This document shows, one piece after another, positions 8,430-28,805 of a stretch of 64,000 nt of DNA. Every line of letters begins with the position of its first letter. Position 1 is the first letter of the stretch. The position numbers were made by a program, and so were the translations under genes. The notes below the pieces were generated by a model that saw nothing but the letters and a program-made list of their open reading frames with translations, was not told the origin of the DNA and searched no databases. The stretch lies in the IMG/VR virus record IMGVR_UViG_3300028840_008185, positions 186,001 to 250,000 of that record; one strand, given 5' to 3'.

Positions 8430-8430
8430 G

Positions 8431-12442: not shown

Positions 12443-12732
12443 TCCAGTTCCTCGCTTTTATCTTCCAGCTTGGCAAGTTTTGTTTCAATGTATCGCATAA
12501 CATTCTCTATGCGGGTTCTCGCCAGCACTGAAAAATCGTCATCTCCTGATAACTCTTCAAGAATATCACCAAGTTCGTAGGACACAAGCTTTTTCAGTTC
12601 TGTTAAAAGCCCTCTACGTTCCGCAATTCTTTGATACTTAGAGGAACGGTGAAGAAGATCATATCTTTCTTCGCTCTCCTGTAATTTTTGCAGCAAATCT
12701 TCTTCTTCTGCGGCACGCTTAGATAGTTTCAT
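12439..12732 (-). CDS. small helical protein starting MKLSKRAA
   Basis: ATGA overlaps on both sides; shared N-terminal motif. Confidence 0.85.
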   Translation of the reverse strand: MKLSKRAAEEEDLLQKLQESEERYDLLHRSSKYQRIAERRGLLTELKKLVSYELGDILEELSGDDDFSVLARTRIENVMRYIETKLAKLEDKSEELE

Positions 12733-14741: not shown

Positions 14742-14742
14742 A

Positions 14743-15180
14743 TCATTCCTCTGAGTAAGCTAGAACATTCACGGGGAGGTTACTAACATATTCCAACCAC
14801 TTATAGATTTTGCTCAGTAGCATTGGAAAATACTTCATACTCATCCTTGGAAGATCTACAACGTAGTATCTGTCTTTCTTGCCAGCAGGTTTGGCCATTT
14901 TTCCAAAATATACATCTCCAAGCTCGCTTGGCCATACCATCTTTAGTCTGAATGATTTCCCATCTCCTTCTAGCTCAAGAGTAGCAGATAGATATTCATC
15001 CTCTTTCGCGCCCGCAACTGGCCAGAAGGTTGTCTCCAGTGTTATGAATTCACGCTCGGCAGGCTTTCCCTCAGTGGGACCAAACCATTTGAATGGGAAG
15101 TTCTTTATCTTATCCGGAGTGAAATATCTGAATATGCTCCCCTTATCAGCCTCTTCGTGCTTCTTCCTGAATTCGCTCAT
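14743..15180 (-). CDS. hypothetical protein with WPSxLGD domain paralogous to polyprotein segments
   Basis: LKMVWPSELGDVYFG. Confidence 0.8.
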   Translation of the reverse strand: MSEFRKKHEEADKGSIFRYFTPDKIKNFPFKWFGPTEGKPAEREFITLETTFWPVAGAKEDEYLSATLELEGDGKSFRLKMVWPSELGDVYFGKMAKPAGKKDRYYVVDLPRMSMKYFPMLLSKIYKWLEYVSNLPVNVLAYSEE

Positions 15181-18100
15181 CTCGCGTCTCTCTTCTCGAA
15201 CTCATGCAAATCTATTAGTTGCTTTTCAGTCAAGCCTCTTTTCTGTTGCTCTTCGTAATCTTGGGGATACTCAAGAGGGAAAACCTCAGCTTCCTCTCCC
15301 TTTTCTTCCGGCGGCGTCACCTTCTCTGTTGGAAACTCAATCACCTTGGCGGCTCGTCTGGAAAGCTGAAACCCATCACTTATCTCTTCCAAATATTCTC
15401 CCGGCAGCGTGCCACTTTTAATTGTCACAAACGCATGAGGGGTGCCCTGAAATAGAAGGCGGGGGCTCGTGCGTTTGAATCCCTTGGCTTTACTAAGCTC
15501 TTCGAGAAGGGAGCCTTGCTCTACTTCGCGCTGGCTCCGTGGCTTTTCCTCTACAATACTAACACCTTCAATCAGTCCATCCGCTAGAGCACGGCTGTAA
15601 TCAACTGCATACAGCTTTCTGCGCTTTGCGAATGCTTGTTGTTCAGGATCATCTTGTGGTCCTATTGGCCGTAACAATAACGAAACCACACGAGAACCAC
15701 CAGGGCCTCGTAGCTTTTCAAGAGCTTCAATAATTTCTTCTGTAGTTAGAGATTCGGCTTCTTTTCCAAGCTCTTCTGCCGCCCTTCCACGATATTTTTC
15801 TAATACTTCAGGCATATGAGACAAACTAGCGGGAGTCTTCAAGCCCTCTTTTATTAGATCTACTCCTGAGGGTCCGTAGTGATATAGCATAGTGGGCACA
15901 GCGGCTCGTTTAGATATAGCAAAAGAACCCTCGGACTTCATCTTTTTTGATAGGGCGCCTATCTTGCTAATAACTGGCAACAATTTCCTCAAGACACCAT
16001 CAAGCTCGCTATAAGATCCTTCTTTAGCGAATATCATTGTGGGCCCGTCTTCTATGGCATCAAGCTCCATATCCCCAAGTTTAGATGGCCAGTGCAACTC
16101 TAAGCGGTAATCGCCTTCTCTTATGGGTGCGTCCGGTTCCAATACCTTGGAGCGCAGCTTTATGGTGAGTAAGAACCAGCCGTATGCGACCTTGGGCATA
16201 AATTCTTCCTCATAGTGCGTTGGAATATCTGGGAAGCTGGTGCTTAACTCAAGCGTGTATCGAGGGTAACCAGTCTCGGAGTAATCATCAGCCTGAACAT
16301 CCCAACCCTCTATTTTGCTTGGTGGAATTAGCAGCCTGAACTCTCTTTCGTAGACATCATCCTCACCCGCCCTTTTTGATAAAGGGATGCCACCTCCTCC
16401 TCCAGCAAACTTCTCCATCACCATTCTCTTAGCCACATCTTTCGTAAGCTCTTTGCCTTCCTCAGCCAACCCATCCTGAAGCTCAAGCAGATACTTTCCA
16501 ACCTGACCGATGATTGGCCCAGGTTTTACATCAAGGATTTCCATAATTTCTTTGCCGTTAAGTATGGGTTTCCTGGCCACGGGAATCTCTTTGGTCTGCT
16601 CGATGCGCTTTCTTAGTTCTGGGATGTAGTTGCTGGGAGGCATGTTCCCTAGAGCATCGGCCTCCGCAAGATCCAGCACATCATCAACCATGCCTTCGCC
16701 CACGTCGCGCACGAACTTCCTAAGAGCTTTTGGCGAGGCTTTTTCAAGGGAGTGTGGGCGCATGTGGTTCTCGACCATGGATTTCACGCGCTGTATAGTT
16801 TTTCCGTCAAACTTGAGTCTGCGCAAGATGGCCTCAGCAATTTCTGCGCCCGCTTTCTCATGGCCCAAGAACTGAATCTTGTCGCCTATGAACTCTTGGG
16901 TCTCAGGTTTGCCGATGTCGTGGAGTAGGGCAGCCAGCTGCCCGTGAATCGTAGGTGGGGCGTTCGAGAGGACTAATAGAGTGTGCTTATAGACATCTCC
17001 TTCCTGGTGGCTGCGCTTGTCGTGCTTGACACCAATGAGCCCATAGATTTCGGGAAGGACTAAGGGAAGGAGGTTGGTCGCTTTCATTATTTTAATGGCC
17101 TGGGCGGTTTTGCCAAGCTTCATTACTTTTGTGAGTTCTTCTTGTATGCGTTCCCAAGAGATTTTCTGTATCTCTTCGGCGTTTCTCCTGACTGATCTGA
17201 GCATAAACATAGGAATCTTCCAGTCATATTTACATTGGAAGCGAATAAGACGAAGCATGCGCAGTGGGTCATTAGAGAACATCGTGTCGGGATTCACAGC
17301 CGGGTGGCCTCTTAGAATGCCCTTTTCTATATCCTCTTTGCTTGTGCCCGTCAGGTCTTCTATTTCGCCCGATGTGAGGTCTCTGAGCAGCATGTTCACC
17401 GTGAAGTCTCTACGCTCGATGTCATCCTTGAGAGGCGCGTAAACCGTCTCACGCTGCCTTGAGGAGGGATCGGGGTAGTGTTCCTTCTGCGTGTCCGCAA
17501 TATCGATTTCAGCGCCTGTCGTAGCATATCGCTGGCCCTCATAAGTTATATCATCCTTGAAGGCGACGTGCCAGATTGGGTAGGCTGCTCCTAGCTGGCG
17601 AGGGGTTGAGGTCTGCTCGGGGAAACTGTCAGCTATAAACTTGCAGAGGGCTTCAGCCCCGCCACGCATTTCCACAACTATGTCGAGGTCTTTGGACTCC
17701 ATGCCCATCAGCTTGTCTCGCTCGTAGCCTCCTACGGAGAAGGCTTTACCGGCGAAAGGGGTGCCCGGTAGTATCCGGAGTAGAAGTCTTTGAACCTCCT
17801 CCTCCGCGAGCGCAGCTCGCTTTGACAGTTTGACATCACTGGCTGGCTGATCTGCTTTCGCACCGGCTCGTTGCTCCGCCCACCTTATTAGACCATCCAT
17901 GGATCTGGCTGCACTTTCAGCACTCATACCTATAACTGTGCCAGCCTCCTCGGGAACTTTGTATAGAAAGTCTTCTTCTGGATAGTTTCTACCCATACCG
18001 GCGAAGGCTCTATTATCCAAATCCATGGGGTCGCCGGATGGTCTTTCATTTTTTTCGTAGATCGCATATGGCGGCGGCTCAAATCCAGGCTCACTAACTT

Positions 18101-19691
18101 CACTAATTATCATAACTGCCTGCGCAAAATACTCACGCTCATCAATATACACCTGCTGCATATTGGCGTTAAGGAAGTTTATCAACTCAGCTTTTACAGC
18201 CGAATTTTTTATTTGTGGCCAGATGTTTGTAAGTCGGTCACTCACCAATTGGAACAACACAGAATCAGGATCGCCATCAGCAAAATCTTCCGTCAGGCCA
18301 ACTGCCGCATCATCCGCATGGTCAAGCTCTCTGAACCGCCCCAGCCCATGACCGAAAGCAGCCAGCAAATACCATACGGGGGCCTCTTCTTCTACTGGTT
18401 CAGGAGACTCCTCTTTTGGCACCTCAGGAGCCACCGGCTCCTCTGGCGGCGCTTCTCTCTTCTTATGCATCTCCCACATCTCTTCTTCTGGAATAGGCTT
18501 AAGCGGCGTGCCAGCGCCGGGAGGAAGCTTATAGCTCTTCCACTGACCTGGCTGCTGTGTTTCGTAAGGTTCAAACCACTTAATGGCTCGCTTCGAGATA
18601 GGAAAAGATTGAGAGGCAACCTTACCCTTCGTGGTGTAGGATGTTTCCAATCCGGGAACAAGGTATTGATTCTTGAGAGTTCCAGCTTCGTGGCCTACGA
18701 TCTTAGCTGTGTTCTCCAGAGCTTCTTTGAACTCTTCTTTGAGTTTCTTTTCCTTTTCTTTTTGCTCCTTTGGAAGACTTCCCTTTCTCACCTTCTTAAG
18801 CTCTTTGCGCATCTCTTCATTGGCATGAAAACCCCTAATATCTTTGGCGGTGATATCAAATGGCTTCAAATAGGCATTAACAGTATTGTCCGTAATGTAA
18901 TAATTATCTCCCTTGAAGATCGTATCATTATCTTTCTTGCCACTCACCATTTCCCTGAGAACGGGAATGATGCTTTTGTTAGTGATCTTCTTATCTTGTT
19001 CTACGCCAGATTTTCCGGTGTATTTAATCACGGCTGTTCCACCAGTAAATTTTATATGTTTCTTCAGCCAGGTGGTCACGCCGTAATGCTTCATATCCTC
19101 GGCAGAATATCTGTTCCCAACTCTCTCGTATGTATCGTCAATGAGAGCTACAGCCAGAGCGTTATATTTTGTCTTGATGTCGCTAGACTTGAGATCCTTG
19201 CCCACTTCCTTTCTAACTTTGGTAATATTTTTGGACAGCTTGTCCAACTTCTTGGCCTTCTTTTCGTCGCGCTCCTTGACATGCTTTTCGGTGTAAATAT
19301 ATGTAATGTTTCCACTTTCTTCTTTCTTTTTCTCGACGTATTCTGCGGCTCGTTTAGACAAAGGAATCCTCTGCGGAATGCCGCTAAGCTCTTGGAATTC
19401 TTCATAATCTACAAGGATTTCTGTATTGGCGGGAATGTCTCGACTAGCGGCTAAGGCATAGCCTTTCTTGGTGGAAATGGCCAAGGCATTGGGGTCTTTG
19501 GAATGATTGAGGTATTTTCCTATGTCCGTTCTGGAATAGGCAGAATCAGTATCTTTGGCCCCTTTCAACTTCTTCATGATGAGGCCAACTACATCACCCT
19601 TCTTAATTTTTTCTTTAGAAAACACGCCTTTGCCGTGAATCTGTGATTTCTTGATTTCTACGGGAAGATCACGCACCGATATTGCTGCCAT
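15177..19691 (-). CDS. 1504-aa multi-enzyme polyprotein (SET, topoisomerase IB, unknown, CCA-adding/HD, unknown, ART-like, tail)
   Basis: Uninterrupted ORF; six [IL]S[KR]RA motifs at the domain boundaries. Confidence 0.92.
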   Translation of the reverse strand: MAAISVRDLPVEIKKSQIHGKGVFSKEKIKKGDVVGLIMKKLKGAKDTDSAYSRTDIGKYLNHSKDPNALAISTKKGYALAASRDIPANTEILVDYEEFQELSGIPQRIPLSKRAAEYVEKKKEESGNITYIYTEKHVKERDEKKAKKLDKLSKNITKVRKEVGKDLKSSDIKTKYNALAVALIDDTYERVGNRYSAEDMKHYGVTTWLKKHIKFTGGTAVIKYTGKSGVEQDKKITNKSIIPVLREMVSGKKDNDTIFKGDNYYITDNTVNAYLKPFDITAKDIRGFHANEEMRKELKKVRKGSLPKEQKEKEKKLKEEFKEALENTAKIVGHEAGTLKNQYLVPGLETSYTTKGKVASQSFPISKRAIKWFEPYETQQPGQWKSYKLPPGAGTPLKPIPEEEMWEMHKKREAPPEEPVAPEVPKEESPEPVEEEAPVWYLLAAFGHGLGRFRELDHADDAAVGLTEDFADGDPDSVLFQLVSDRLTNIWPQIKNSAVKAELINFLNANMQQVYIDEREYFAQAVMIISEVSEPGFEPPPYAIYEKNERPSGDPMDLDNRAFAGMGRNYPEEDFLYKVPEEAGTVIGMSAESAARSMDGLIRWAEQRAGAKADQPASDVKLSKRAALAEEEVQRLLLRILPGTPFAGKAFSVGGYERDKLMGMESKDLDIVVEMRGGAEALCKFIADSFPEQTSTPRQLGAAYPIWHVAFKDDITYEGQRYATTGAEIDIADTQKEHYPDPSSRQRETVYAPLKDDIERRDFTVNMLLRDLTSGEIEDLTGTSKEDIEKGILRGHPAVNPDTMFSNDPLRMLRLIRFQCKYDWKIPMFMLRSVRRNAEEIQKISWERIQEELTKVMKLGKTAQAIKIMKATNLLPLVLPEIYGLIGVKHDKRSHQEGDVYKHTLLVLSNAPPTIHGQLAALLHDIGKPETQEFIGDKIQFLGHEKAGAEIAEAILRRLKFDGKTIQRVKSMVENHMRPHSLEKASPKALRKFVRDVGEGMVDDVLDLAEADALGNMPPSNYIPELRKRIEQTKEIPVARKPILNGKEIMEILDVKPGPIIGQVGKYLLELQDGLAEEGKELTKDVAKRMVMEKFAGGGGGIPLSKRAGEDDVYEREFRLLIPPSKIEGWDVQADDYSETGYPRYTLELSTSFPDIPTHYEEEFMPKVAYGWFLLTIKLRSKVLEPDAPIREGDYRLELHWPSKLGDMELDAIEDGPTMIFAKEGSYSELDGVLRKLLPVISKIGALSKKMKSEGSFAISKRAAVPTMLYHYGPSGVDLIKEGLKTPASLSHMPEVLEKYRGRAAEELGKEAESLTTEEIIEALEKLRGPGGSRVVSLLLRPIGPQDDPEQQAFAKRRKLYAVDYSRALADGLIEGVSIVEEKPRSQREVEQGSLLEELSKAKGFKRTSPRLLFQGTPHAFVTIKSGTLPGEYLEEISDGFQLSRRAAKVIEFPTEKVTPPEEKGEEAEVFPLEYPQDYEEQQKRGLTEKQLIDLHEFEKRDAR
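15366..15902 (-). other. probable ADP-ribosyltransferase-fold (Tpt1/KptA-like) domain (segment 6)
   Basis: LYHYGPSG...IKEGLKTP at the start and GTLPGEYLEEI at the end resemble YHGT...GL.P and IP.EYI patterns. Confidence 0.45.
16383..17813 (-). other. cca: class II tRNA nucleotidyltransferase (CCA-adding/poly(A) polymerase family) with HD domain (segment 4)
   Basis: VGGYERD...KDLDIVV, RRDFTVN, DPLRMLRLIRF, SWERIQEEL, LLHDIGKP. Confidence 0.92.
18600..19346 (-). other. DNA topoisomerase IB catalytic domain (segment 2)
   Basis: RVGN, GKSG, KDIRG, VGH, KNQYL catalytic residues as in bacterial/viral TopIB. Confidence 0.9.
19362..19691 (-). other. SET domain (polyprotein segment 1)
   Basis: SQIHGKGVF...YLNHSKDPN...RDIPANTEILVDY: GxG, NHS and ExxxDY SET motifs. 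Confidence 0.9.
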
Positions 19692-19733: not shown

Positions 19734-19964
19734 TTAGAGCCAGGTATGATAATCATGCGTATCAGCATCCCAAACCACATGAAAAATTCTGGCGCAGGCA
19801 GGACAGTGAGGGTGGAGGACAAAATCATCCTCTTCTGGGTAGTAGATCCAGAGGTATGAAAGGCAGGAGGGACAGTTTGTTTCAAGATGGTAATATCCCT
19901 CGGGTGTTGGCAGATCAAAAAGCGAACAAATGACAGATCTATCGCTAGCATTAAGTATCTTCAT
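19734..19964 (-). CDS. small zinc-finger protein (CPSC...CPAC), N-terminus MKILNA
   Basis: ATGA overlap; two CxxC. Confidence 0.8.
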   Translation of the reverse strand: MKILNASDRSVICSLFDLPTPEGYYHLETNCPSCLSYLWIYYPEEDDFVLHPHCPACARIFHVVWDADTHDYHTWL

Positions 19965-20317
19965 ATCGCACCCACCTCCGCAGCTATTTTTTCTAGCTTT
20001 TTAACAAACCAAGTGGTCATGTCCGTAAGCCACCTGTCGCTTTCGTGGAAATTGGCATTCCTCATTGCTTCTTTGCCATCTCGATTAATCCTAAAAGATG
20101 TTGCGGCTTGCCCATCATCTCCCGATGTTATGTCTATGTATGCATATATGTTCGCAAACGTCATATAGGAAGGTGGATAAACCCAGACAATTTCCATGCC
20201 TCCATTCCACTCGGACATTCTAACTGGAGCCAACTTACATCTATTAACTATGGGCAAAATGATTTCCTTAGCCCGCCCTATCTGTTTGCTAAGGGGAACT
20301 GAATTCAAAACTTTCAT
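19961..20317 (-). CDS. hypothetical protein, N-terminus MKVLNS
   Basis: Start reassigned to ATG 20317 (ATGA overlap). Confidence 0.8.
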   Translation of the reverse strand: MKVLNSVPLSKQIGRAKEIILPIVNRCKLAPVRMSEWNGGMEIVWVYPPSYMTFANIYAYIDITSGDDGQAATSFRINRDGKEAMRNANFHESDRWLTDMTTWFVKKLEKIAAEVGAI

Positions 20318-20616
20318 ACGGGGAACCACCTTTCCAGGAAGTCTATAAGTTCATCCTTGGCGTAATCTTTTGATATAAAATGAACAGCGCCCATCATGTT
20401 GTTGTCCATAATCCTCACGAACAATTCATTCTTAGTGGCACCCTGATCCTCGGCGTCATCACCGACCATCAAAACAACTTTACTAGGCCACCTAAAGGCA
20501 ATCCCACCTAACTTTTCTATAATCTTATCAGGCTGCTCAATACCTTCTTGTGTGCAAAACTCTTCCACAGCTTCTTTAGATCGTTCAAAAAAAGAAATAG
20601 AATTAACCAATATCAT
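20314..20616 (-). CDS. hypothetical protein, N-terminus MILVNS
   Basis: Start reassigned to ATG 20616. Confidence 0.7.
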   Translation of the reverse strand: MILVNSISFFERSKEAVEEFCTQEGIEQPDKIIEKLGGIAFRWPSKVVLMVGDDAEDQGATKNELFVRIMDNNMMGAVHFISKDYAKDELIDFLERWFPV

Positions 20617-21016
20617 TTTGGCCGAAATCTCCTGGTTTGGATTCGACACTGGCCAACCATCGTATAACATCAGCCGCGCCGTTTCTTATCGCTTGAACTA
20701 TCTCTTGCGTCATCGGTCTTCCTAGAAAACCATGAATCATCCACAAAATATTGCACTGAATAATCCATCGCTGGTCATACGTAAGATAAGCGGCATCGTA
20801 GTCGGAGATGGTCACGCCTACCTTTCGCTGCTCGAAATCGGCCTGAACTATCAACCTATTTATCATGTCATCTACACCCACTTTAGCTATGTTTCTACAT
20901 ATGGGCGGATCAGGAAGCCCGTAAAAGGGATACACTTCCCAGCCTTCCGGCGGAGATGTATGAACTTCTCTCGTCGGTAAAATTGATTCTTTAACAAACG
21001 CACCTGGGCGCATCAT
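20603..21016 (-). CDS. hypothetical protein (MMRPGAF...)
   Basis: Start just after upstream stop. Confidence 0.75.
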   Translation of the reverse strand: MMRPGAFVKESILPTREVHTSPPEGWEVYPFYGLPDPPICRNIAKVGVDDMINRLIVQADFEQRKVGVTISDYDAAYLTYDQRWIIQCNILWMIHGFLGRPMTQEIVQAIRNGAADVIRWLASVESKPGDFGQNDIG

Positions 21017-21017
21017 C

Positions 21018-21227
21018 TTAGGCATCTTTCCATCCTTTTGGGAGCTTGGGCTCTTCAATTTTGATAAGATCGTCATTATAGTCTTCTGGGTATTGAAGCC
21101 ACACCTTTTCTATTCTCTTGGATATGGCATCCAGATCCTGCTCACCAATATATCTGTCAAAACTTTTCCGGAAGACTTCACAAACTTTATCCAACAATCT
21201 TTCTTCCTCTGTGTTAAGTATTTTCAT
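21018..21227 (-). CDS. hypothetical protein, N-terminus MKILNT
   Basis: ATGA overlap. Confidence 0.75.
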   Translation of the reverse strand: MKILNTEEERLLDKVCEVFRKSFDRYIGEQDLDAISKRIEKVWLQYPEDYNDDLIKIEEPKLPKGWKDA

Positions 21228-21769
21228 TTTTTACCCACTTCGAATGTTCTAGTAGTAATAGCCTTACTATCCTCTAAAGTAGTAAATGGAATTTCCTCTT
21301 CCCACTCTTCTTGAGCGCCAACATTAAAAGCTCTCGGGCTTCGCACTTCAATGTCTGGTTCCTCTTCCTGGAATCCTTCACCCTGGAACCAAGGGAGCTT
21401 TGTCAATAGCTCAACAAGCCCTGGGTCATTAAGAGCATCGCCTTCCTTGTGCATGGGCATACCTTCCTTCCACTCATACTTGTCGGGAATTACTTCCTTA
21501 TCCCTGATTACTTCTGCGGCTGCCTCTTGAATCTCTCCAAGGTTCTTAATAGTCGTGTCCAGAGTTTCTTTGGGCAGAATATTACCATGAAGCTTTGCCC
21601 ACAGCTTCACCTTCTTTATTTTCTCCACCGCATCCTTCTTCACCGTAGCAGAGAACTTCACAAATTCTTTCCACTCACCTTTGGGGTCCAAAGGATCAAA
21701 CTCTCCACACTTAGCTATTAGCTTAACGATCTCAACTGCTTTCTCTAATTCCATTTTCTTAATCTCCAT
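21224..21769 (-). CDS. acidic hypothetical protein (181 aa)
   Basis: ORF packing. Confidence 0.8.
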   Translation of the reverse strand: MEIKKMELEKAVEIVKLIAKCGEFDPLDPKGEWKEFVKFSATVKKDAVEKIKKVKLWAKLHGNILPKETLDTTIKNLGEIQEAAAEVIRDKEVIPDKYEWKEGMPMHKEGDALNDPGLVELLTKLPWFQGEGFQEEEPDIEVRSPRAFNVGAQEEWEEEIPFTTLEDSKAITTRTFEVGKK

Positions 21770-21971
21770 ATTTTATTTTTCTTACCGCCAGCGTCCATTT
21801 AGATTTCACTGGCAAGAACTTCTTGTAATCTGTTGTGCTCTTTATCTCATAGACTTGTTTGTATTCTTTGGTTGAAGGGGTCCAGTTGTAAATCTTTCCA
21901 ACCGGGAACGCATCTCCATTTAGATTTATTCTCACACCCCAGCCAATCTCACTGGTATTTAGTAGTTTCAT
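21759..21971 (-). CDS. hypothetical protein, N-terminus MKLLNT
   Basis: ORF packing. Confidence 0.7.
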   Translation of the reverse strand: MKLLNTSEIGWGVRINLNGDAFPVGKIYNWTPSTKEYKQVYEIKSTTDYKKFLPVKSKWTLAVRKIKYGD

Positions 21972-21972
21972 T

Positions 21973-22380
21973 TCAACCCCTTTTGACTATTCTCCAAATT
22001 ATTTCCACATCAGCCAATCTCAACATTTCTCGTTTATTTATCAGGCCATGTTTAGGATCCAAGAACTGCCTCCTTTTGCTATCCCAAACAACGTAGTGCC
22101 CAGAAAGATTGGGCTGCCTCCACTGGACAGCTACGAGTGCAGCGCCCTTCTGCGGGAGCCTGCATATCTCGTTGTAGTCGTAACCGAGAGAATCCAAAAT
22201 GTCTAGAACTCTGTGGGGATACAATCCACCACGAGAGCGTTTAAGCTCAGGAAATTGTTCAGTAACTTCCTCGTAGAGATGCTTGGTAAGCATGGCTATG
22301 CAAGCTATACCGCAGTCCGTCTTCCGTCTTTGCTCTACAAATTCAATTTGCCTTGGCCTGTGAGACGGAATTTTACTCAA
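21973..22380 (-). CDS. stand-alone C39-like cysteine peptidase
   Basis: EQRRKTDCGIAC...GHYVVWD...LDP. Confidence 0.85.
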   Translation of the reverse strand: MSKIPSHRPRQIEFVEQRRKTDCGIACIAMLTKHLYEEVTEQFPELKRSRGGLYPHRVLDILDSLGYDYNEICRLPQKGAALVAVQWRQPNLSGHYVVWDSKRRQFLDPKHGLINKREMLRLADVEIIWRIVKRG

Positions 22381-22383
22381 TGA

Positions 22384-22626
22384 TTATTCACCTCGAAGCT
22401 TTTCGTCTAACTCCTTTAATATAAGACCTTTTTCCTGGTCAGTCAACCCCTCGTCTTCAACTTTCATGAGTTTTGAGAGATCATTGGTCTGGTGCTCTAT
22501 CTGCTTCATAAGCCTTTGCAGGGCTCTTTTTCTCTCAGGAGAGGAATTAGCATATGGAGATTTCTGTAGCTTCTCTATAGCCGTTCGCAAAACTTCGGGA
22601 AGCTTCTCAAATAGAATGTTGATCAT
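22384..22626 (-). CDS. small helical hypothetical protein
   Basis: ORF packing. Confidence 0.7.
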   Translation of the reverse strand: MINILFEKLPEVLRTAIEKLQKSPYANSSPERKRALQRLMKQIEHQTNDLSKLMKVEDEGLTDQEKGLILKELDEKLRGE

Positions 22627-23035
22627 TTTTTACACCTATGATTTTATACACGAGCCCATTCTCTGTCGAACATACATTCTTGACAAACCCTCCATCGTTG
22701 CGTGCTTTTTCCAGAACAACCTCCACGAGCTTAACCGACTCCTTGCTTAAGCTATTTGTTTCCATAAAGGCGGTTCGTTGACTGCACACATACAGAGTTA
22801 AAGCGCCGCCTGTCACCATATCTTTATGGACGCGCAAAAGCGGGCAAACCTTAAATCTATCAACTTCTTCAAGCTCACAGAAAGACATTAGCCCTAGTTT
22901 GTAGCCGATCCTTGCGCTTTTGATGTGCTGAAATGTTCCTAGGGAATAGCCCAAAAACAGCATGAATAGCAGCACAAGAGTGCATACAATTATTTTTCCT
23001 ATATTGTTCTTTATCTTTCTCAAAAACCCTATCAT
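22607..23035 (-). CDS. membrane-anchored hypothetical protein
   Basis: Basic N-terminus then hydrophobic helix IIVCTLVLLFMLFLGYSLG. Confidence 0.75.
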   Translation of the reverse strand: MIGFLRKIKNNIGKIIVCTLVLLFMLFLGYSLGTFQHIKSARIGYKLGLMSFCELEEVDRFKVCPLLRVHKDMVTGGALTLYVCSQRTAFMETNSLSKESVKLVEVVLEKARNDGGFVKNVCSTENGLVYKIIGVKNDQHSI

Positions 23036-23331
23036 CTTTGTCCCTTTTTAAGCTCAGTCTTAATGCCATTCACATCGCCTTCTTTAAGCATGCGAATAAA
23101 GTGAACCAGATAATCAATGTCGTTTAAATCGTCTGGGTCAAACAAATCGATGTTAATACGCAGCACCTCTTTCGCATCAATGAGAAAGAGCACAGATTTA
23201 AGCTCGCGGGCGACCTTTACTTCCCAACACGGACTCCTGTAATCCTCCTCGCTATCAAAATCAAAAAATTCGCCGGGATCTGCCTTGTCATCGAGAATTT
23301 CCCCAAGTTCTTTGCTGTTAATCACCTTCAT
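23032..23331 (-). CDS. acidic hypothetical protein, N-terminus MKVINS
   Basis: GAGG SD; ATGA overlap. Confidence 0.8.
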   Translation of the reverse strand: MKVINSKELGEILDDKADPGEFFDFDSEEDYRSPCWEVKVARELKSVLFLIDAKEVLRINIDLFDPDDLNDIDYLVHFIRMLKEGDVNGIKTELKKGQR

Positions 23332-23344: not shown

Positions 23345-23545
23345 TTATTCTTCGTTATTTATTAACTCCGTGTAACAAAACTCACACACGTTCCATGCCG
23401 CTTCTGGATCAGACGCGCCTTCTTCATAATGTATTAGGAGCGCTGGGGTCTGGCAGCCGTCGCACTTCCCAAACTTCCTCTTTTTCATATACTTGTCTAT
23501 ATATCGTCTTTGCCCACGTTTTAAAATGGTTGTAAAATCAGACAT
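23345..23545 (-). CDS. small zinc-finger protein (CDGC...CEFC)
   Basis: GAGGAG SD before ATG 23545. Confidence 0.75.
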   Translation of the reverse strand: MSDFTTILKRGQRRYIDKYMKKRKFGKCDGCQTPALLIHYEEGASDPEAAWNVCEFCYTELINNEE

Positions 23546-23546
23546 A

Positions 23547-23975
23547 TTACTCCTCGTCGTCTTTTTTAACACCAACTCCTGGCCAGCGCTTTTTCCATTC
23601 TTCCATCGCCTTACTTACCCTTTCGTTTTTGTTTCCAGCTTTGGGAAATGGACCAAGTGCTTCTTCGCTGCCCTCTACGTTGTGGTGATACAAACCATCT
23701 TCCTTGACCGTAGGATGTTTCTCGGGCGTAGGCAACTGCTCTTTGTCGTGCGTCAACACAACTGGCTCGCCAGTAACCCTTATCTCCACCGGAATTGGTT
23801 GTCCCATGAACTCAATTTTGGGTAAATCATCTACTTCTCTGGTCATACACAACACTAACCTTGGCGGATCTTCTTCGAACTTGAGTTCGTTAAGTTCTGC
23901 AATCTTCGATGTCAGATCCCAGGCATGCAGTTGTAAATAATCCAAAATTAGTTTCTTCACGTCTTGATTTTCCAT
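23547..23975 (-). CDS. hypothetical protein (142 aa)
   Basis: AAGGAG SD. Confidence 0.8.
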   Translation of the reverse strand: MENQDVKKLILDYLQLHAWDLTSKIAELNELKFEEDPPRLVLCMTREVDDLPKIEFMGQPIPVEIRVTGEPVVLTHDKEQLPTPEKHPTVKEDGLYHHNVEGSEEALGPFPKAGNKNERVSKAMEEWKKRWPGVGVKKDDEE

Positions 23976-23981
23976 ATCATT

Positions 23982-25106
23982 TCACTCCTTTAAAATTGTT
24001 CTTGCAGCAATGAGGCCAGAGGCCATGGCTCCAATAAGATTGCTTACCCTGGAAGTGCATTCACCGGCACCATACAAGCCGGGAACACTGCCAATTTTCA
24101 TTGAAGGATCTACAGGCATCACACCTCTAAATCTTACCTCGGGCACATACATCGTTGCATAGCTTATAAATGAGGGGATTATATCTTCAATCGCCTCGAA
24201 TGCTTCTCCTAAGTTTTTGAAAGCATCTATGTGTTCCAGAACGGATTTACCTTCCATGTAGTCTTCAACCCGCTCCTTTTTTATTTTATCGTTAGTGAGC
24301 ACATTAACTATCTGCACATCTCTTATGGCGTCCTGGGAGCTTGACTCAGTGCTCACCATAAAATTGGTTCTGGAGGATTTCTTGCCGGGCATGCAGTGCC
24401 CAAATGCTGACAACACTTTGGCTTCATCCCACTCACCGACAAACGAATCAACTCTGGAATCGTCGCACTCTGCGCTCTCGCAGGAAACTTTCACATCACC
24501 AAGCTCAACTAGCACATCATTTATCCTGAATGTTGGAACCTCAACTCGAACACCAATCTTAATGGTCTCTTCCTCAGGCTCGACGTTGAAAGAAGCACAA
24601 ACATCTTTGGTCCATTCAATAGAGTTTTTGCCCGTGGAAATCAAACATTTGTTAGATCTAAAGATGCCCTTGTTGGTATGCACTTCGAAGTCTTTATCTC
24701 TGTCTATTGCTATAACCTCAGTGTTGAACATGCTCTCGGTTCGTTTGCCCACTTTCATGCGATAATAAGACGCGAGTTTTAGACCAAAGCGATCCGGAAA
24801 ACGACAATATTTACCAGTCTTTTCCCCTTTCAGCTTGAGCGTTTCAATCTTGTGATCTGCGACTCTCCTTATCAGGGCTATTATTTCCCTGACCACCTTG
24901 GCATTCCCTAGCACCGGGTCTTCCAATTCCAGACGATCAACAAGAAACAAGCCTCTTCCAAAAAAACCAGAGGTTAGGCTCCTCCTCTTCTTGAGATCTT
25001 TCCCCTGCTCTATCAGAAGAACGGACATTCCCTTTTCCGAGGCTTTCTTGGCTGCTACTACTCCAGCGGGACCAGCTCCCACTATTATTAGATCATATAT
25101 TTTCAT
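23982..25106 (-). CDS. FAD/NAD(P)-dependent oxidoreductase
   Basis: IIVGAGPAG dinucleotide-binding motif; C-terminal GLYGAGE; IGVRVE. Confidence 0.88.
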   Translation of the reverse strand: MKIYDLIIVGAGPAGVVAAKKASEKGMSVLLIEQGKDLKKRRSLTSGFFGRGLFLVDRLELEDPVLGNAKVVREIIALIRRVADHKIETLKLKGEKTGKYCRFPDRFGLKLASYYRMKVGKRTESMFNTEVIAIDRDKDFEVHTNKGIFRSNKCLISTGKNSIEWTKDVCASFNVEPEEETIKIGVRVEVPTFRINDVLVELGDVKVSCESAECDDSRVDSFVGEWDEAKVLSAFGHCMPGKKSSRTNFMVSTESSSQDAIRDVQIVNVLTNDKIKKERVEDYMEGKSVLEHIDAFKNLGEAFEAIEDIIPSFISYATMYVPEVRFRGVMPVDPSMKIGSVPGLYGAGECTSRVSNLIGAMASGLIAARTILKE

Positions 25107-25750
25107 TTAACTAGTTCATATACATCTCGATAGGCAGGATTCTCGTCTTTTAGACACTCATCCGTGTCTATATACTTCTGGAGAGTCCGCCTTACGGATT
25201 TCTTAAATGGCCACATAAAGTAATAGCCTGGGCCCGTGAAAGCTTCAACTCGGCTGTCCAAATAATCTTCTCTTACCGAACCGTGCCGCCACTTCCTAAC
25301 TTTACAACTCATACCATATCCTCTAAGCTCCGCCCATCCTCTTCCGGGGGATGGAATTGGCGCAAGAAAGACTAGAGCAAAGAGAAACAAAAGGAACCAT
25401 AGGTTTATAAACGCTAAAAAAGCCCCAAGCGATAGGAGCGCGAGGAGCTGCGGCAAAAGATAGATGGTTGGAAAGACTACCGGCGCATTATGGGAATCCC
25501 AAGCATGCACATACTCATGGGCGAGGGTATAAAAATACCTACCGGGATTCGCCTCTACGTCTTTTCTCTTCGGAAAATAAACTGTGGTTCCGATAGTGGT
25601 CGTGTATCGAGTCATGAAAGCCTTGTTGAAGAACAAAACCTTGCCAAGCCTCTTCATAAAAGAGCTTTCATCCTTATACTCAATCTTAAAATCGGGCATA
25701 CGTTCTTTCATTTTAGCCGCGAGCTTGAAATATCTCTCTCGATCATCCAT
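25103..25750 (-). CDS. HExxH metallopeptidase-like protein with internal transmembrane hairpin
   Basis: AHEYVH (25505-25519), hydrophobic stretch, downstream ELRGY. Confidence 0.7.
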   Translation of the reverse strand: MDDRERYFKLAAKMKERMPDFKIEYKDESSFMKRLGKVLFFNKAFMTRYTTTIGTTVYFPKRKDVEANPGRYFYTLAHEYVHAWDSHNAPVVFPTIYLLPQLLALLSLGAFLAFINLWFLLFLFALVFLAPIPSPGRGWAELRGYGMSCKVRKWRHGSVREDYLDSRVEAFTGPGYYFMWPFKKSVRRTLQKYIDTDECLKDENPAYRDVYELVK

Positions 25751-25952
25751 CCGTATCCTCCATGGCCTCAAGTGCTGTGGCCAACCAGACTGCTATTTGT
25801 TCCGTGATTTCCTTGCTCAAAAGAACTGTCGTGGAAGTGTGCTTCCCCTTGTCCCCAATGTGAATAGCTTGGATCTCTACTCTGGGCAACCCGCTCTCCA
25901 AATCCAATCTGATACTGCCCAAGCCTCCTAAATCAATTACCAATGGTTCCAT
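25743..25952 (-). CDS. hypothetical protein (69 aa)
   Basis: GAGGAG SD. Confidence 0.7.
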   Translation of the reverse strand: MEPLVIDLGGLGSIRLDLESGLPRVEIQAIHIGDKGKHTSTTVLLSKEITEQIAVWLATALEAMEDTDG

Positions 25953-26290: not shown

Positions 26291-27133
26291 TTAGCCACTT
26301 ATTTTATCAATAAACTCCTTGAGTTCCAAGCCCTCGAACCCCGATTCTTCAGCAGCTTTCTTTAGTCCGCCGACAGAATTTAGAAAGGTTCTAATTACTT
26401 GCATCTCTTTTGTCGTGAAAGTGCAAGAACCCAGCCTGTAATCCTGGAACGCCTCACAAGCCACTGGAACCACAGGCTTAATTAACTCAAAGATGGCCTC
26501 GGCATATTGTCTCATTTCCCACTGCGCATGCGGATGAAGCCTAAGCCCTAGAAAATGAAAGAGATTGTGGAGATCCATTTTCCAATACCACTGAGTATAC
26601 GAAGAAAGCGGAAGATTGATTCGTGCCATCTCTTTAGCTGTCCCCTGCGCCAGCATACTATCGTAGTCGGTGAAGGCCGCGTTCTGGCCAGCTTCAATAA
26701 TGCCGATTACTTCTTCCTCGTTACTAAGTTTGCCTGTGCTTCCCTGCTTGTTGAACTTGTCCTGAACCCTAATGTGATTAGGTAGATAGGCTCCGTTGTT
26801 CAACTTAGAATACCTACCACTCTGCTCGTTGAGACTGGCTGTTCTATGGCGAACCCACTGTCTGGCCACAAAGATCGGCATTTTGCAATGGAACTTGAAC
26901 TCCACCATCTCGAATGGAGATGTATGCCTGTGTCGCATCAAATACCTGAGAAGTTCTCTATCCTTCTCTGCGCCCTTGGATCCCTTATTGAAACTCACGC
27001 GGGCTGCCTGGACGATAGAGGTGTCGTTACCAAAGAAATCTACAAGTCTTACAAAACCTTGATCCAGTACCTCGATACTCCTACCGCAGTACTCCCGCTT
27101 CATCTTAGCTTCTTCCATATAAATATCTTCCAT
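26291..27133 (-). CDS. thyX: flavin-dependent thymidylate synthase
   Basis: HTSPFEM...FVARQWVRHRTASLNEQSGRY ThyX signature. Confidence 0.97.
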   Translation of the reverse strand: MEDIYMEEAKMKREYCGRSIEVLDQGFVRLVDFFGNDTSIVQAARVSFNKGSKGAEKDRELLRYLMRHRHTSPFEMVEFKFHCKMPIFVARQWVRHRTASLNEQSGRYSKLNNGAYLPNHIRVQDKFNKQGSTGKLSNEEEVIGIIEAGQNAAFTDYDSMLAQGTAKEMARINLPLSSYTQWYWKMDLHNLFHFLGLRLHPHAQWEMRQYAEAIFELIKPVVPVACEAFQDYRLGSCTFTTKEMQVIRTFLNSVGGLKKAAEESGFEGLELKEFIDKISG

Positions 27134-28141
27134 TTATCTTCTCTCTTTCTCGTTGAGTGCGCCCTCCAGCGCCTTGTGGGTATTCCTACCCCAAACGCCA
27201 TCTGCTTTCAATCCGTAGTCCGCTTGAAATTGCTTCAAAGCCCTCTCAGTTTTGGGGCCAAATTTACCATCCAGCGAACCACATTCGTATTCCAACTTCA
27301 GCAGCGTCCATTGGCGCCTTTCCCAATCGTTAAACTCCCTAAAACATCTTGGGTAATTGGGCATTTTAATCTCTACCCCATTTAAAAACCTGTAGTGATC
27401 AAAGGATATTGGATCAATTTTCCCCTTGTTCGAGTTATAATGACAAATAATCCCTTTGTAGGCTTTTGGTTTAGCCAAAACTGACTGAGCTATTAAACCA
27501 TTTTTAGCACGCGGGAAATCGAGTTTGATGTTGGGGAACACCTCTACTAATGCAATACCCAATCTAATAAGTGTCGCATATTGGGCGTCATTATACTCAA
27601 ATCCATTAATCCACATTCCTTGAACCTTATCTCTCCTGATCTCTCTTGGCCCAACTTTATATTTCTTTTGATGTGCCTTGTCATAGGCGTCTGGGCGCTT
27701 TCCAGCGTGAGCCCTAGAGTCTATCTCTATCCCTACCGACATTGGATTGTTCCCTCCGCCGTGCCATGCCTTCTCTTTTAGGTCTAGCGTTTGGTAGAGC
27801 ACCCCGTTGTCATCCAGGATAAAATGAACAGATAGGCGGCGCTGGTTGTGGAGGACATTGAAAGTATCTCTGGCATGATATAGACCAGAGTGATGTAGAA
27901 AGAACTGCGTGATTTTCTTCTGCAACTGAGGCAGTTTCTTAATTGTAAGCAGTTTGTTTCTTTTGCTGTATCTCTTACCCTTTACAACTATCCTCTGGGT
28001 TTTGCCCGTCTTCCTGTCCTCATACTCGGTCACATGCTCCGAAGTGTCATAGCCATTAAGCCCATTGATTTCATCCCACAACACCACTCTTGTCCCGATG
28101 TCGAATTTTTGTCCGCACGCAACGATACTGGTATTAGCCAT
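27134..28141 (-). CDS. N-acetylmuramoyl-L-alanine amidase (Amidase_2) with C-terminal peptidoglycan-binding domain; probable endolysin
   Basis: FFLHHSG, SVHF, AWHGG, SVGIEI, ICHY, KIDP; C-terminal DGKFGPKTERALKQFQ...ADGVWG. Confidence 0.92.
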   Translation of the reverse strand: MANTSIVACGQKFDIGTRVVLWDEINGLNGYDTSEHVTEYEDRKTGKTQRIVVKGKRYSKRNKLLTIKKLPQLQKKITQFFLHHSGLYHARDTFNVLHNQRRLSVHFILDDNGVLYQTLDLKEKAWHGGGNNPMSVGIEIDSRAHAGKRPDAYDKAHQKKYKVGPREIRRDKVQGMWINGFEYNDAQYATLIRLGIALVEVFPNIKLDFPRAKNGLIAQSVLAKPKAYKGIICHYNSNKGKIDPISFDHYRFLNGVEIKMPNYPRCFREFNDWERRQWTLLKLEYECGSLDGKFGPKTERALKQFQADYGLKADGVWGRNTHKALEGALNEKERR

Positions 28142-28805
28142 CTTTCTCTCCTGTTACGCCACTTATCCACAGCTTTTTAGACAGATGCTTGGTAATCTCT
28201 TCATGGATTTCTTCGATGGTCTTAGGCGGAGCGGCATTAACTATCTGGAATCGGTGCTCCTCTTGGATGCTCTCAGCCAGTTTTAGAAAGCCGTGTCGCA
28301 CGTCTTCATGAAACTTAACCTCCGCCTGTTCTATTCTATCACCTGCGCCATTGCTCTTGGCCTTGGCTCTTTCTAATCCAACATCTACAGGAATATCAAG
28401 AATGAAGGTAAGATCGGGGACCAGGTTGCTTGTGGCAAAATCAATAAGAACATCAATCTTGCACCTGCTTAGCCCTCTAGCGCACTGATATACTCTTGTA
28501 GAATCAGCATACCTGTCGCATATAACATGGTTTCCTTTCTCCAACTCTGGCCTGATGAGCCGCTCAACGTGCTGAGCCCTATCAGCCAGAAAAAGAAAAA
28601 GTTCGGACAGGGGAACAATGTCATTCTCCGCATCCAACAATAGATTTCTTATCTTAACACACTCTCTTATGAACGAACTACCTGGTTCCTTTGTGCGAAT
28701 ATACGAAATCTTTCTATTCTTCATCCACTCACAAAGCTTATCAGCCTGGGTGGTCTTCCCACAACCTTCCCCGCCCTCAAGTGTAATGAATAGACCCTTA
28801 CTCAT
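28134..28805 (-). CDS. tmk: thymidylate kinase
   Basis: FITLEGGEGCGKTTQ, TKEPG, FLADRAQH, ICDRYADS. Confidence 0.97.
   Translation of the reverse strand: MSKGLFITLEGGEGCGKTTQADKLCEWMKNRKISYIRTKEPGSSFIRECVKIRNLLLDAENDIVPLSELFLFLADRAQHVERLIRPELEKGNHVICDRYADSTRVYQCARGLSRCKIDVLIDFATSNLVPDLTFILDIPVDVGLERAKAKSNGAGDRIEQAEVKFHEDVRHGFLKLAESIQEEHRFQIVNAAPPKTIEEIHEEITKHLSKKLWISGVTGEKDG

What the first reader, a model, noticed from the sequence alone, without database searches (positions are those of the whole stretch)
19734..23331. Six otherwise dissimilar small ORFs share an N-terminal M-K-hydrophobic-hydrophobic-N-[ST] tag
Seen: MKILNAS (19964), MKVLNS (20317), MILVNS (20616), MKILNT (21227), MKLLNT (21971) and MKVINS (23331). 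Codons differ (ATGAAGATACTTAAT, ATGAAAGTTTTGAAT, ATGAAACTACTAAAT, ATGAAGGTGATTAAC), so conservation is at the protein level, and the downstream sequences show no similarity I can see. The cluster lies directly upstream of the SKRA cluster. Inference: a second short N-terminal address or degron tag.
Basis: partly seen in the sequence, partly recalled or inferred. Interest (0 to 1): 0.6.

Follow-up and report, generated by a model that had tools for sequence, protein, structure and literature searches.

The report
Shared N-terminal tag on phage mini-proteins
In an uncultured huge phage, six otherwise unrelated small proteins encoded side by side all begin with the same six-residue tag (Met-Lys-hydrophobic-hydrophobic-Asn-Ser/Thr). 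Relatives keep this tag while swapping the proteins behind it, so it looks like a sorting label, possibly for loading small effector proteins into the virus particle.

Summary
In the whole 318 kb phage record, MK[ILVM][ILVM]N[STA] occurs five times in six frames. All five are ORF starts with Shine-Dalgarno sites on the minus strand at window 19964-23331. MILVNS at 20616 is a K2-to-I variant that t2 orthologues also show. About 0.05 matches are expected genome-wide (P about 2e-18 for 5 of 14 cluster genes).

Beyond residues 1-8 the six proteins share no detectable similarity. Eleven syntenic loci from related huge phages (GC 30-56%) carry the same tag on 40+ small ORFs in at least 24 sequence clusters. 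Every hit is a gene start. Ser6 uses both AGY and TCN codons, so selection acts on the peptide. In the one universally conserved tagged family, M1, K2, N5 and S6 are 4 of 11 invariant columns at 31-44% identity. AlphaFold models leave the tag outside the fold.

The cluster lies between a C39-like cysteine peptidase and giant multi-domain "polyvalent" proteins (the SKRA proteins). In two relatives those proteins sit in the head-morphogenesis module.

Best reading, inferred and not shown: a recognition tag analogous to the T4 capsid-targeting sequence. Rivals are a protease leader and a degron. No partner was identified.

The parts
19734..19964 (-). t1, tagged ORF (76 aa, MKILNA...). The body has two CxxC pairs, so it is zinc-ribbon-like.
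   Evidence: Orthologues in L002/L003 keep MK[IM]LNA. Zinc-ribbon tagged proteins recur in relatives.
19961..20317 (-). t2, tagged ORF (118 aa from the ATG at 20317, MKVLNS...).
   Evidence: Four homologues at 68-100% identity start M[KI]VLNS.
20314..20616 (-). t3, tagged ORF (100 aa from the ATG at 20616, MILVNS...), the K2-to-I variant of the tag.
   Evidence: The same start was called in L002 and L003.
20603..21025 (-). Untagged ORF of the variable region (family F12). The likely start is the internal Met, giving about 140 aa.
21018..21227 (-). t4, tagged ORF (69 aa, MKILNT...). It is predicted as a helical hairpin and belongs to a family ending ...FP.P.LPK.
21224..21769 (-). Untagged ORF (181 or 175 aa) of the variable region.
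21759..21971 (-). t5, tagged ORF (70 aa, MKLLNT...). Its start lies 1 nt after the peptidase stop codon.
   Evidence: Weak orthologue in L005 at 5603 (E 3e-4).
21973..22380 (-). C39-like cysteine peptidase (135 aa). The Q-x4-D-C-G and G-H-Y motifs are conserved. It marks the boundary between the conserved and variable parts of the cluster.
   Evidence: Pfam PF03412, E 1.1e-6, above the cut-off. Invariant Cys23 and His95. Weak hits to the ComA and PCAT1 peptidase domains.
22384..23035 (-). Two conserved untagged ORFs: an 80-aa protein and a 142-aa protein with an N-terminal transmembrane helix.
23032..23331 (-). t6, tagged ORF (99 aa, MKVINS...). It is the only tagged family conserved in all relatives.
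23345..25771 (-). Conserved upstream part of the cluster: a CxxC...CxxC mini-protein (23345-23545), a 142-aa ORF, an FAD-dependent oxidoreductase (23982-25106), and a 222-aa membrane protein with an HExxHxxD motif (25103-25771).
15177..19691 (-). 1504-aa multi-domain 'polyvalent' protein (SET, topoisomerase IB, CCA-adding/poly(A) polymerase plus HD) with six [LI]S[KR]RA junctions. It lies directly downstream of the tagged cluster.

Best explanation
M-[KR]-[LVIT]-[LI]-N-[ST] is a short, exposed N-terminal recognition peptide. It marks a fast-turning-over set of small accessory proteins (40-118 aa) for one common phage-encoded reader.

The most likely use is as a loading signal that brings these proteins into the virion. 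They would then be delivered with the DNA, together with the neighbouring giant polyvalent effector proteins. This is how the roughly 10-residue capsid-targeting sequence of T4 loads its diverse internal proteins.

Shown:
- The tag exists and is under protein-level selection.
- It sits on unrelated protein bodies.
- It stays outside the predicted folds.
- Tagged genes fill the variable stretch between a C39-like peptidase and the polyvalent protein genes.

Inferred: that a reader exists, that the destination is the capsid, and that the cargo are host-takeover or counter-defence proteins.
For: 1. Specificity. There are five strict matches in 318 kb, all gene starts in one 3.6 kb cluster, against 0.05 expected.

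2. Conservation across relatives. Syntenic loci with GC from 30 to 56% carry the tag:
- L005: 6 tagged ORFs
- L037: 6
- L041: 6
- L039: 5
- L034: 3, plus variants
- L042/G002: 3-4
- L006/G001: 2
- L044: 5 or more
Every regex hit in six frames is a gene-strand ORF start.

3. Different cargo. The 40 tagged proteins fall into at least 24 BLASTP clusters once the first 8 residues are removed. They include zinc ribbons, helical hairpins and alpha/beta domains, and sets differ between relatives. None matches Pfam or PHROGs.

4. Peptide-level selection. Ser6 is encoded by AGY in 12 cases and TCN in 18, Leu by TTR and CTN, and K/R by AAR, AGR and CGG. In the t6 family, M1, K2, N5 and S6 are 4 of only 11 invariant columns at 31-44% identity. 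Nearly all 42 family representatives keep the tag.

5. The tag is free. In the AlphaFold model of t6, residues 1-30 have pLDDT about 48 while the fold at 31-97 scores 81-91. In t4, residues 1-4 are below 50 and a helix starts at residue 6.

6. Context.
- The downstream proteins belong to a large family of huge-phage multi-domain proteins built around topoisomerase IB plus variable enzymes.
- These fit the polyvalent-protein class, which is proposed to be packaged and delivered with the DNA (PMC5512222).
- In relatives such proteins lie in the head module: L046, two genes upstream of a head maturation protease and five upstream of the major head protein.
- In G001 they lie next to a 1353-aa ORF with a protease domain and about 20 kb from the capsid gene.

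7. Precedents. [quoted passage not shown] The N-terminal 30 residues of P1 DarB suffice for capsid loading (PMC9024508).

8. Tags of non-homologous proteins are more alike within a genome than between genomes (0.371 against 0.287, permutation p about 7e-4). For example, position 6 is Leu only in L044. Base composition may contribute to this.
Against: - There are no virion proteomics, no expression data (no RNA runs) and no cultured relative.
- No reader was identified.
- The tag is only about 6 residues, shorter than the T4 signal (about 10) or the P1 signal (more than 9).
- No protease-cleavage motif follows the tag, unlike the T4 sequence.
- The polyvalent proteins that should be packaged do not carry this tag. 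They carry the different SKRA motif.
- In the window's own genome the cluster sits among nucleotide-metabolism genes. No head genes were found in the 318 kb held.
- The tagged proteins are not basic as T4 internal proteins are.
Confidence: 0.35

Rival explanations
1. Leader or propeptide for a cluster-encoded protease. The tag would be read, and perhaps removed, by the adjacent C39-like cysteine peptidase or by the HExxHxxD membrane protein. The layout resembles a bacteriocin or RiPP operon: one peptidase and many precursors with a common N-terminus and variable bodies.
For: - The peptidase is conserved in every locus, with invariant Cys and His.
- It sits exactly at the start of the variable, tag-rich stretch.
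- t5 starts 1 nt after its stop codon.
- The tag is N-terminal and unstructured.
- Asn-Ser/Thr is a chemically plausible scissile pair.
Against: - C39 substrates are defined by a 15-30 residue leader ending in Gly-Gly. No conserved GG, GA or GS exists in the tagged proteins. The GG of t2 and t3 is not kept in orthologues.
- The conserved segment is only 6 residues.
- In G002 and its near-identical copies the peptidase carries an in-frame TAG at the conserved Trp codon, yet the tags persist.
- All loci but L002, L003 and L044 were found with the peptidase or its neighbours as bait, so co-occurrence is not an independent observation.
Confidence: 0.2
2. N-terminal stability signal (degron). The tag would hand these proteins to a host AAA+ protease such as ClpXP, so that early effectors are short-lived.
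For: - The tag is an exposed N-terminal Met-basic-hydrophobic-hydrophobic peptide.
- From my own knowledge, not tested here: ClpX recognises N-terminal motifs of this general type (Flynn et al. 2003), and the lambda O N-terminal degron region contains a similar K-I-L-N stretch.
- Lys2 means the initiator Met is retained.
Against: - Invariant Asn5 and Ser/Thr6 are not features of any described bacterial degron class that I know of.
- A host-read degron would not be expected to stay the same across phages with GC of 30-56%, which presumably have different hosts.
- It also would not be expected to drift genome by genome.
- It would not explain restriction to one cluster.
Confidence: 0.12
3. Relic of common descent without a separate function. 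The genes would be serial duplicates whose bodies diverged beyond recognition, while the first codons persisted.
For: The genes are tandem, of similar size, co-oriented and often translationally coupled. Several tagged families have local paralogues.
Against: - Persistence of exactly residues 1-6, when everything else is unalignable, itself requires purifying selection on the tag.
- The bodies have different predicted architectures: zinc ribbon, helical hairpin and alpha/beta.
- Homologous bodies keep the tag across about 30% identity.
Confidence: 0.08
4. Co-translational effect. The first six codons or the nascent hexapeptide would tune initiation, early elongation or translational coupling in this operon.
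For: AAA at codon 2 and AU-rich early codons are common. ATGA stop-start overlaps occur at t1, t2 and t4.
Against: - Variation follows the genetic code. Third positions are free, and Ser switches between AGY and TCN. The GC-rich relative uses CTG-CTG-AAC-AGC. An RNA-level signal is therefore excluded.
- A nascent-peptide effect remains possible, but nothing supports it.
- Other highly coupled genes in the genome lack the tag.
Confidence: 0.07

Closest known systems
Capsid targeting sequence (CTS) of phage T4 internal proteins (IPI, IPII, IPIII, Alt) and the variable internal-protein locus of T4-type phages
   Same: A short N-terminal peptide beginning Met-Lys is shared by otherwise dissimilar small proteins. 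These are encoded in a plastic locus whose content differs between related phages. The cargo are delivered effectors (PMC3012670).
   Different: - The sequence is different and shorter (6 residues against about 10).
- It has no terminal protease site of the L/I-x-E type.
- No T4-type prohead protease was detected.
- Packaging has not been shown.
- The proteins are not basic.
- The phage clade is unrelated and uncultured.
N-terminal packaging signal of phage P1 DarB and the Dar system (polyvalent proteins loaded into the head)
   Same: An N-terminal signal directs anti-defence proteins into the capsid. It is associated with giant multi-domain polyvalent proteins (PMC9024508; PMC5512222).
   Different: The P1 signal is more than 9 and at most 30 residues long, and it is not a motif shared by many proteins. 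Here the polyvalent proteins themselves carry another motif (SKRA), not the tag.
Double-glycine leader peptides processed by C39 peptidase domains (bacteriocin, RiPP and competence-peptide precursors)
   Same: A C39-type peptidase lies next to multiple small ORFs that have a common N-terminus and hypervariable remainders.
   Different: - There is no Gly-Gly site.
- The conserved part is 6 residues rather than 15-30.
- The bodies are 40-110-residue folded proteins.
- There is no ABC exporter.
- The peptidase is stand-alone and phage-encoded.
N-terminal extension of long ribosomal protein bL27 and of phage 80alpha capsid and scaffold proteins, removed by the cysteine protease Prp. Motif: ML-x-x-(D/N)-LQ-(F/L)-F'A-(S/H)-KK (PMC9405229).
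   Same: - It is a short N-terminal peptide with Met1, a hydrophobic residue at position 4 and Asn/Asp at position 5, and phages have adopted it.
- The neighbouring SKRA junctions (F-x-[LI]-S-K-R-A) resemble the F-F'A-S-K-K end of that motif.
- One relative has the two joined, as MKSLN-FPI-SKRA.
   Different: - The tagged proteins lack the LQFF'A half.
- Positions 2 and 3 are swapped in character.
- No Prp homologue occurs in the three phage records.
- The host is unknown.
This is a resemblance only.

Membership tests
T4-type capsid targeting sequence / internal proteins | A short N-terminal peptide shared by otherwise unrelated small proteins of one phage. | tested here: met
T4-type capsid targeting sequence / internal proteins | Sequence similarity to the T4 CTS, with a prohead-protease site (L/I-x-E) ending the signal. 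| tested here: not met
   The tag is M-[KR]-h-h-N-[ST]. No conserved Glu or other cleavage motif follows it. No Peptidase_S77 or S78 was found.
T4-type capsid targeting sequence / internal proteins | The tag is necessary and sufficient for incorporation into the prohead, and the proteins are present in virions. | not testable with these tools
   This needs virion proteomics or reporter fusions. There is no cultured relative.
T4-type capsid targeting sequence / internal proteins | A locus whose gene content varies between related phages while the tag is retained. | tested here: met
Double-glycine leader / C39 peptidase substrates | A cognate C39 peptidase with the catalytic Cys and His encoded nearby. 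| tested here: met
Double-glycine leader / C39 peptidase substrates | A leader of 15-30 residues ending in GG, GA or GS, with conserved hydrophobic positions. | tested here: not met
   No conserved Gly pair. Conservation ends at residues 6-8.
Double-glycine leader / C39 peptidase substrates | Peptidase binds and cleaves the N-terminus. | tested here: inconclusive
   The complex prediction gave no verdict. This needs biochemistry.
Prp-cleaved N-terminal extension (long bL27 type) | The full motif ML-x-x-(D/N)-LQ-(F/L)-F'A-(S/H)-KK. | tested here: not met
   Only M1, the hydrophobic position 4 and N5 agree. The LQFF'A part is absent from the tagged proteins.
Prp-cleaved N-terminal extension (long bL27 type) | A Prp (Peptidase_Prp, PF04327) protease is available. 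| tested here: inconclusive
   None was found in G000, G001 or G002, but these records are incomplete and the host is unknown.
Bacterial N-terminal degrons (ClpX N-motifs, ClpS N-degron) | An N-terminal motif that confers protease-dependent instability. | not testable with these tools
   The Met-basic-hydrophobic-hydrophobic resemblance rests on recalled literature only.
Polyvalent proteins (for the downstream neighbour, not the tagged ORFs) | Many unrelated enzymatic domains in one giant phage polypeptide, with variable architectures among relatives. | tested here: met

The most novel reading that the evidence does not exclude
The tag is a previously undescribed, portable sorting signal of a clade of uncultured huge phages, read by a dedicated phage factor. 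Together with the SKRA junction motif of the neighbouring polyvalent proteins, it would form a two-signal system that decides which effectors are loaded, processed and delivered with the genome. Under this reading the tag cluster is a hypervariable arsenal of injected mini-effectors, and the six residues would suffice to load foreign proteins.
Probability: 0.3. Interest if true: 0.8.

Novelty: new variant of a known kind. Interest (0 to 1): 0.62.

Why it matters
Huge phages are known almost only from metagenomes, and most of their small genes are unannotatable. A six-residue tag that marks a whole class of them gives three things.

1. A way to find these genes in any related genome by their first codons.
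2. A concrete, cheap hypothesis to test: fuse the tag to a reporter and look for a reader, a cleavage or a change in stability.
3. If it is a loading signal, a minimal handle for putting foreign proteins into large capsids, as the T4 signal is used.

It also ties the small ORFs to the neighbouring giant multi-enzyme proteins. This suggests that the whole region is one delivered or early-acting counter-defence arsenal that evolves by swapping cargo behind a fixed label.

Tried and rejected
- **Peptidase-tag complex.** Complex prediction of the C39-like peptidase with t6 gave 0.11 against a mark of 0.32. That is no verdict, and it is not evidence either way.
- **Family scans.** Pfam and PHROGs scans of all 40 tagged proteins gave nothing above noise. 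Pfam on the window's own cluster proteins found only the C39 hit.
- **Structure and feature look-alikes.** Foldseek of the t6 model against PDB and BFVD gave no match at E <= 0.001. ESM Atlas look-alikes for t2 and t6 gave no usable lead.
- **Longer signal.** A test for an amphipathic helix or strand after the tag found no difference from untagged small ORFs (p 0.09-0.9).
- **Tag as the first half of the SKRA junction.** Asn at -4 or -5 before SKRA occurs in only about a tenth of about 70 sites. This is suggestive in a few cases (MKSLNFPISKRA in G002) but is not general.
- **Known proteases.** Prp, T4-type and HK97-type prohead protease families are not found in the three phage records. The head protease and capsid protein of a related clade were not found in the 318 kb held for this genome.
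- **Close relatives in public collections.** GenBank phages gave none by DNA or protein. IMG/VR searched with the FAD protein gave none.
- **Expression.** There are no RNA runs, so expression could not be examined.
- **Untagged homologues.** The apparently untagged homologues of tagged families mostly turned out to carry variants my regex missed (MRVLNV, MRLINV, MIINST, MGRIINS) or to have miscalled starts. Only one truly untagged paralogue remained (L005 at 5344). I therefore do not claim that the tag is gained and lost freely.
- I repeated it reading the same ORFs from locus L044 by coordinates.
- **Big representative search.** It was not used, because no claim here rests on absence of relatives.

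Full report
**What the window is**

The window is bases 186001-250000 of a 318,373-base IMG/VR virus record estimated at 79% complete. An identical copy of one cluster protein lies on a contig of about 452 kb. This is therefore a huge phage known only from sediment and seawater metagenomes. Almost all genes near the finding are on the minus strand.

**Checking the observation**

- A six-frame scan for MK[ILVM][ILVM]N[STA] gives five hits in the window and the same five in the whole 318 kb. All five are minus-strand ORF starts between 19964 and 23331.
- From the position-specific composition of the N-termini of 548 crudely called genes, 0.05 matches are expected in the genome. The probability of five or more among the 14 genes of the cluster is about 2e-18.
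- The sixth ORF (MILVNS, 20616) lacks Lys2. Orthologues of t2 in close relatives read MIVLNS, so K2-to-I is a tolerated variant.
- All-against-all BLASTP of the 13 cluster proteins shows no similarity beyond the first 6-11 residues.

**Relatives**

I reached syntenic loci from related phages by three routes.
- Homologues of t2 and of the downstream 1504-aa protein, followed by their contigs.
- Scans of the viral and metagenome collections with an alignment of the cluster's peptidase.
- The most divergent member of the t6 family.

GC content across these loci runs from 30 to 56%. The gene order is conserved:
1. ThyX
2. two small ORFs
3. a membrane protein with an HExxHxxD motif
4. an FAD-dependent oxidoreductase
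5. a 140-230-aa ORF
6. a CxxC mini-protein
7. t6
8. a membrane protein
9. an 80-aa ORF
10. a C39-like peptidase
11. a variable stretch of small ORFs
12. one or more giant multi-domain proteins

In every locus the regex M[KRI][ILVMTSA][ILVMA]N[STAC], applied to all six frames, hits only gene-strand ORF starts. The counts per locus are below.

| Locus | Tagged ORFs |
|---|---|
| Window | 6 |
| L005 | 6 |
| L037 | 6 |
| L041 | 6 |
| L039 | 5 |
| L034 | 3 |
| L042 | 3 |
| L035 | 2 |
| L006 | 2 |
| L038 | 1 |

A looser reading adds MRVLNV, MRLINV, MIINST (three copies) and MGRIINS. The most divergent locus, L044, has MKVINK, MKAVNL, MKIINL (two copies) and MKIVNT.

About half of the ORFs in the variable stretch are tagged. 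Among the conserved genes only t6 is tagged.

**What kind of conservation this is**

- The 40 regex-defined proteins are 40-118 aa long (median 78). They fall into at least 24 BLASTP clusters once the first eight residues are removed.
- Recognisable groups include CxxC...CxxC zinc ribbons (t1 and others), a helical family ending FP.P.LPK (t4), a GNWVRVYKKP.GR family, and the t6 family.
- Only t5 and t6 have detectable orthologues in the more distant L005. Four of its tagged genes match nothing in the window.
- The logo is M1; K29/R9/I2; L17/V8/I6/T5/S3; L18/I16/V4/A2; N; S30/T7/A2/C1; then a weaker preference for K/R/N/S at position 7 and K/D/E at position 8.
- All 40 start at ATG. Ser6 is encoded by AGY 12 times and TCN 18 times, Leu by both TTR and CTN, and position 2 by AAR, AGR and CGG. 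Selection therefore acts on the peptide, not the RNA.
- In the t6 family (eight sequences, 31-44% identical) M1, K2, N5 and S6 are four of only eleven invariant columns. Nearly all 42 cluster representatives found in the protein collection begin MK[LV][ILVAT]N[ST]. The exceptions are mostly gene-caller starts placed two codons too late.
- AlphaFold2 places the t6 fold at residues 31-97 (pLDDT 81-91) and leaves residues 1-30 at about 48. In the t4 family residues 1-4 are below 50 and a helix begins at residue 6.

The tag behaves as a free linear motif on different folds.

**Context**

- The 135-aa ORF at 21973-22380 matches Peptidase_C39 above the curated cut-off (E 1.1e-6). It keeps the Cys and His motifs in all relatives and resembles the ComA and PCAT1 peptidase domains weakly.
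- The 1504-aa ORF downstream combines SET, topoisomerase IB and CCA-adding/poly(A) polymerase plus HD domains.
- Its relatives form a large family of 850-2600-aa huge-phage proteins. In these, the topoisomerase IB domain is joined to changing sets of enzymes: 2H phosphoesterase, NUDIX, GNAT, ADP-ribosyltransferase and LPD domains.
- This fits the polyvalent proteins of Iyer et al., which are proposed to be packaged, processed by peptidases and delivered with the DNA (PMC5512222).
- In this clade their domains are separated by a very specific junction, [NSD]-F-x-[LI]-S-K-R-A, which also occurs at the extreme N-terminus of some proteins.
- In a related clade (L045, L046) such a protein lies two genes upstream of a head maturation protease and five upstream of the major head protein.
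- In G001 the SKRA proteins lie beside a 1353-aa ORF with that protease domain and about 20 kb from the capsid gene.
- In the window's own 318 kb no head genes were detected. The cluster's other neighbours are nucleotide-metabolism, MetAP, amidase, PhoH and RNR genes.

**Interpretation**

The closest known arrangement is the T4 internal-protein system. There, diverse small defence-countering proteins share only a short N-terminal capsid targeting sequence (PMC3012670). A second precedent is the N-terminal packaging signal of the polyvalent P1 DarB (PMC9024508).

I therefore favour a recognition tag that a common phage factor reads, most likely to load these proteins into the particle alongside the polyvalent proteins (confidence 0.35). 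The steps from 'tag' to 'reader' to 'capsid' are inferences.

Points against this reading:
- The tag is shorter than the known signals.
- No cleavage site follows it.
- The polyvalent proteins use a different motif.
- There is no proteomic or expression evidence.

**Rivals**

- A leader for the adjacent peptidase (0.2) fits the operon layout. It fails the defining double-glycine feature, and the tags survive in a lineage whose peptidase has an in-frame stop.
- A degron (0.12) fits an exposed Met-basic-hydrophobic N-terminus. It does not explain the invariant Asn-Ser, the restriction to one cluster, or conservation across phages of very different GC content.
- Pure descent without function (0.08) is contradicted by the selective retention of exactly these residues.
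- An RNA-level signal is excluded by the codon pattern. A nascent-peptide effect (0.07) is unsupported.
- Tags of non-homologous proteins are slightly more alike within a genome than between genomes (permutation p about 7e-4). This is what co-evolution with one reader predicts, but base composition may contribute.

**Novelty**

No family, structure or paper in the libraries searched describes this motif. The principle is known from T4. The sequence, the phage clade, the link to a C39-like peptidase and to SKRA polyvalent proteins, and the number of cargo families are new. I rate it a new variant of a known kind, with the function still open.

Noticed in passing
window 9749-19691 (-); also G001 208748-224019 and G002 about 9000-14400: The junction motif [NSD]-F-x-[LI]-S-K-R-A is almost exclusive to giant multi-domain ORFs. 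Counts: six sites in the 1504-aa ORF and two in the 897-aa ORF.

It also occurs at the very N-terminus of some proteins: MKLSKRA at 12732, MKLSKRQ at 12442, and MFYLSKRA, MKSFLISKRA and MKSLNFPISKRA in relatives. It therefore behaves as a module-start signal, not only as a linker.

It resembles the F-F'A-S-K-K end of the Prp cleavage motif of long bL27 (PMC9405229).
   Followed up: partly
window 25103-25771 (-): A conserved 222-aa protein with an HEYVHAWD (HExxHxxD) motif followed by transmembrane helices. This is the zincin signature described for phage-type polyvalent-protein metallopeptidases. It had no Pfam hit at 1e-3.
   Followed up: no
L007 6296-6298 (G002; same in L042 and L043): The C39-like peptidase gene has an in-frame TAG exactly at the conserved Trp codon of the GHYVVW motif. 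This is either a nonsense mutation or a recoded stop in this AT-rich lineage.
   Followed up: partly
L007 6386-6784 (G002 17007-17255): A 132-aa ORF just downstream of the peptidase matches residues 60-142 of the major head protein of a related clade (E 4e-9). It is a capsid-protein fragment or exon sitting inside the tag cluster.
   Followed up: no
G001 187656-189426 (-): The major head protein homologue appears split into pieces separated by ORFs with helix-turn-helix N-termini. These are probably homing endonucleases or an intron.
   Followed up: no
window 1-9000: This stretch has 54-56% GC against 43-46% elsewhere, with short ORFs on both strands and no tRNA or Rfam hit. It lies inside the record, not at an end, so it is not a host flank. 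It may be a foreign insertion.
   Followed up: partly
window 26291-29553 and 49927-54842 (-): The phage encodes ThyX, an amidase with a peptidoglycan-binding domain, a likely thymidylate kinase, a methionine aminopeptidase (Peptidase_M24), PhoH and a class I ribonucleotide reductase large subunit.
   Followed up: partly
window 34085-48654 (-): Nine large ORFs (344-1635 aa) have no PHROG hit at all. They may be structural or fibre proteins.
   Followed up: no
P0129 (t6 family member, identical N-terminus to L042): NCBI names this protein as coming from a Patescibacteria MAG on a 123 kb contig. It is probably a mis-binned phage contig, or a hint at the host.
   Followed up: no
G001 263227-262685 (-) and 63354-63013 (-): Two tag-like starts lie outside the cluster in the AT-rich relative: MRTINSKKK on a 180-aa protein that looks like a sigma factor (from the sequence, not tested), and MKILNSS on a 113-aa ORF. 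These may be chance matches in a Lys/Ile/Asn-rich proteome.
   Followed up: partly
P0040-P0110 (other clades of the topoisomerase-IB polyvalent family): Many of these proteins begin with a different shared N-terminal motif (x3-8-[LI]-[RK]-V-A-A-R-Y). It occupies the position of LSKRA-x-x-Y in this clade. Clade-specific N-terminal signatures may therefore be general in these proteins.
   Followed up: no
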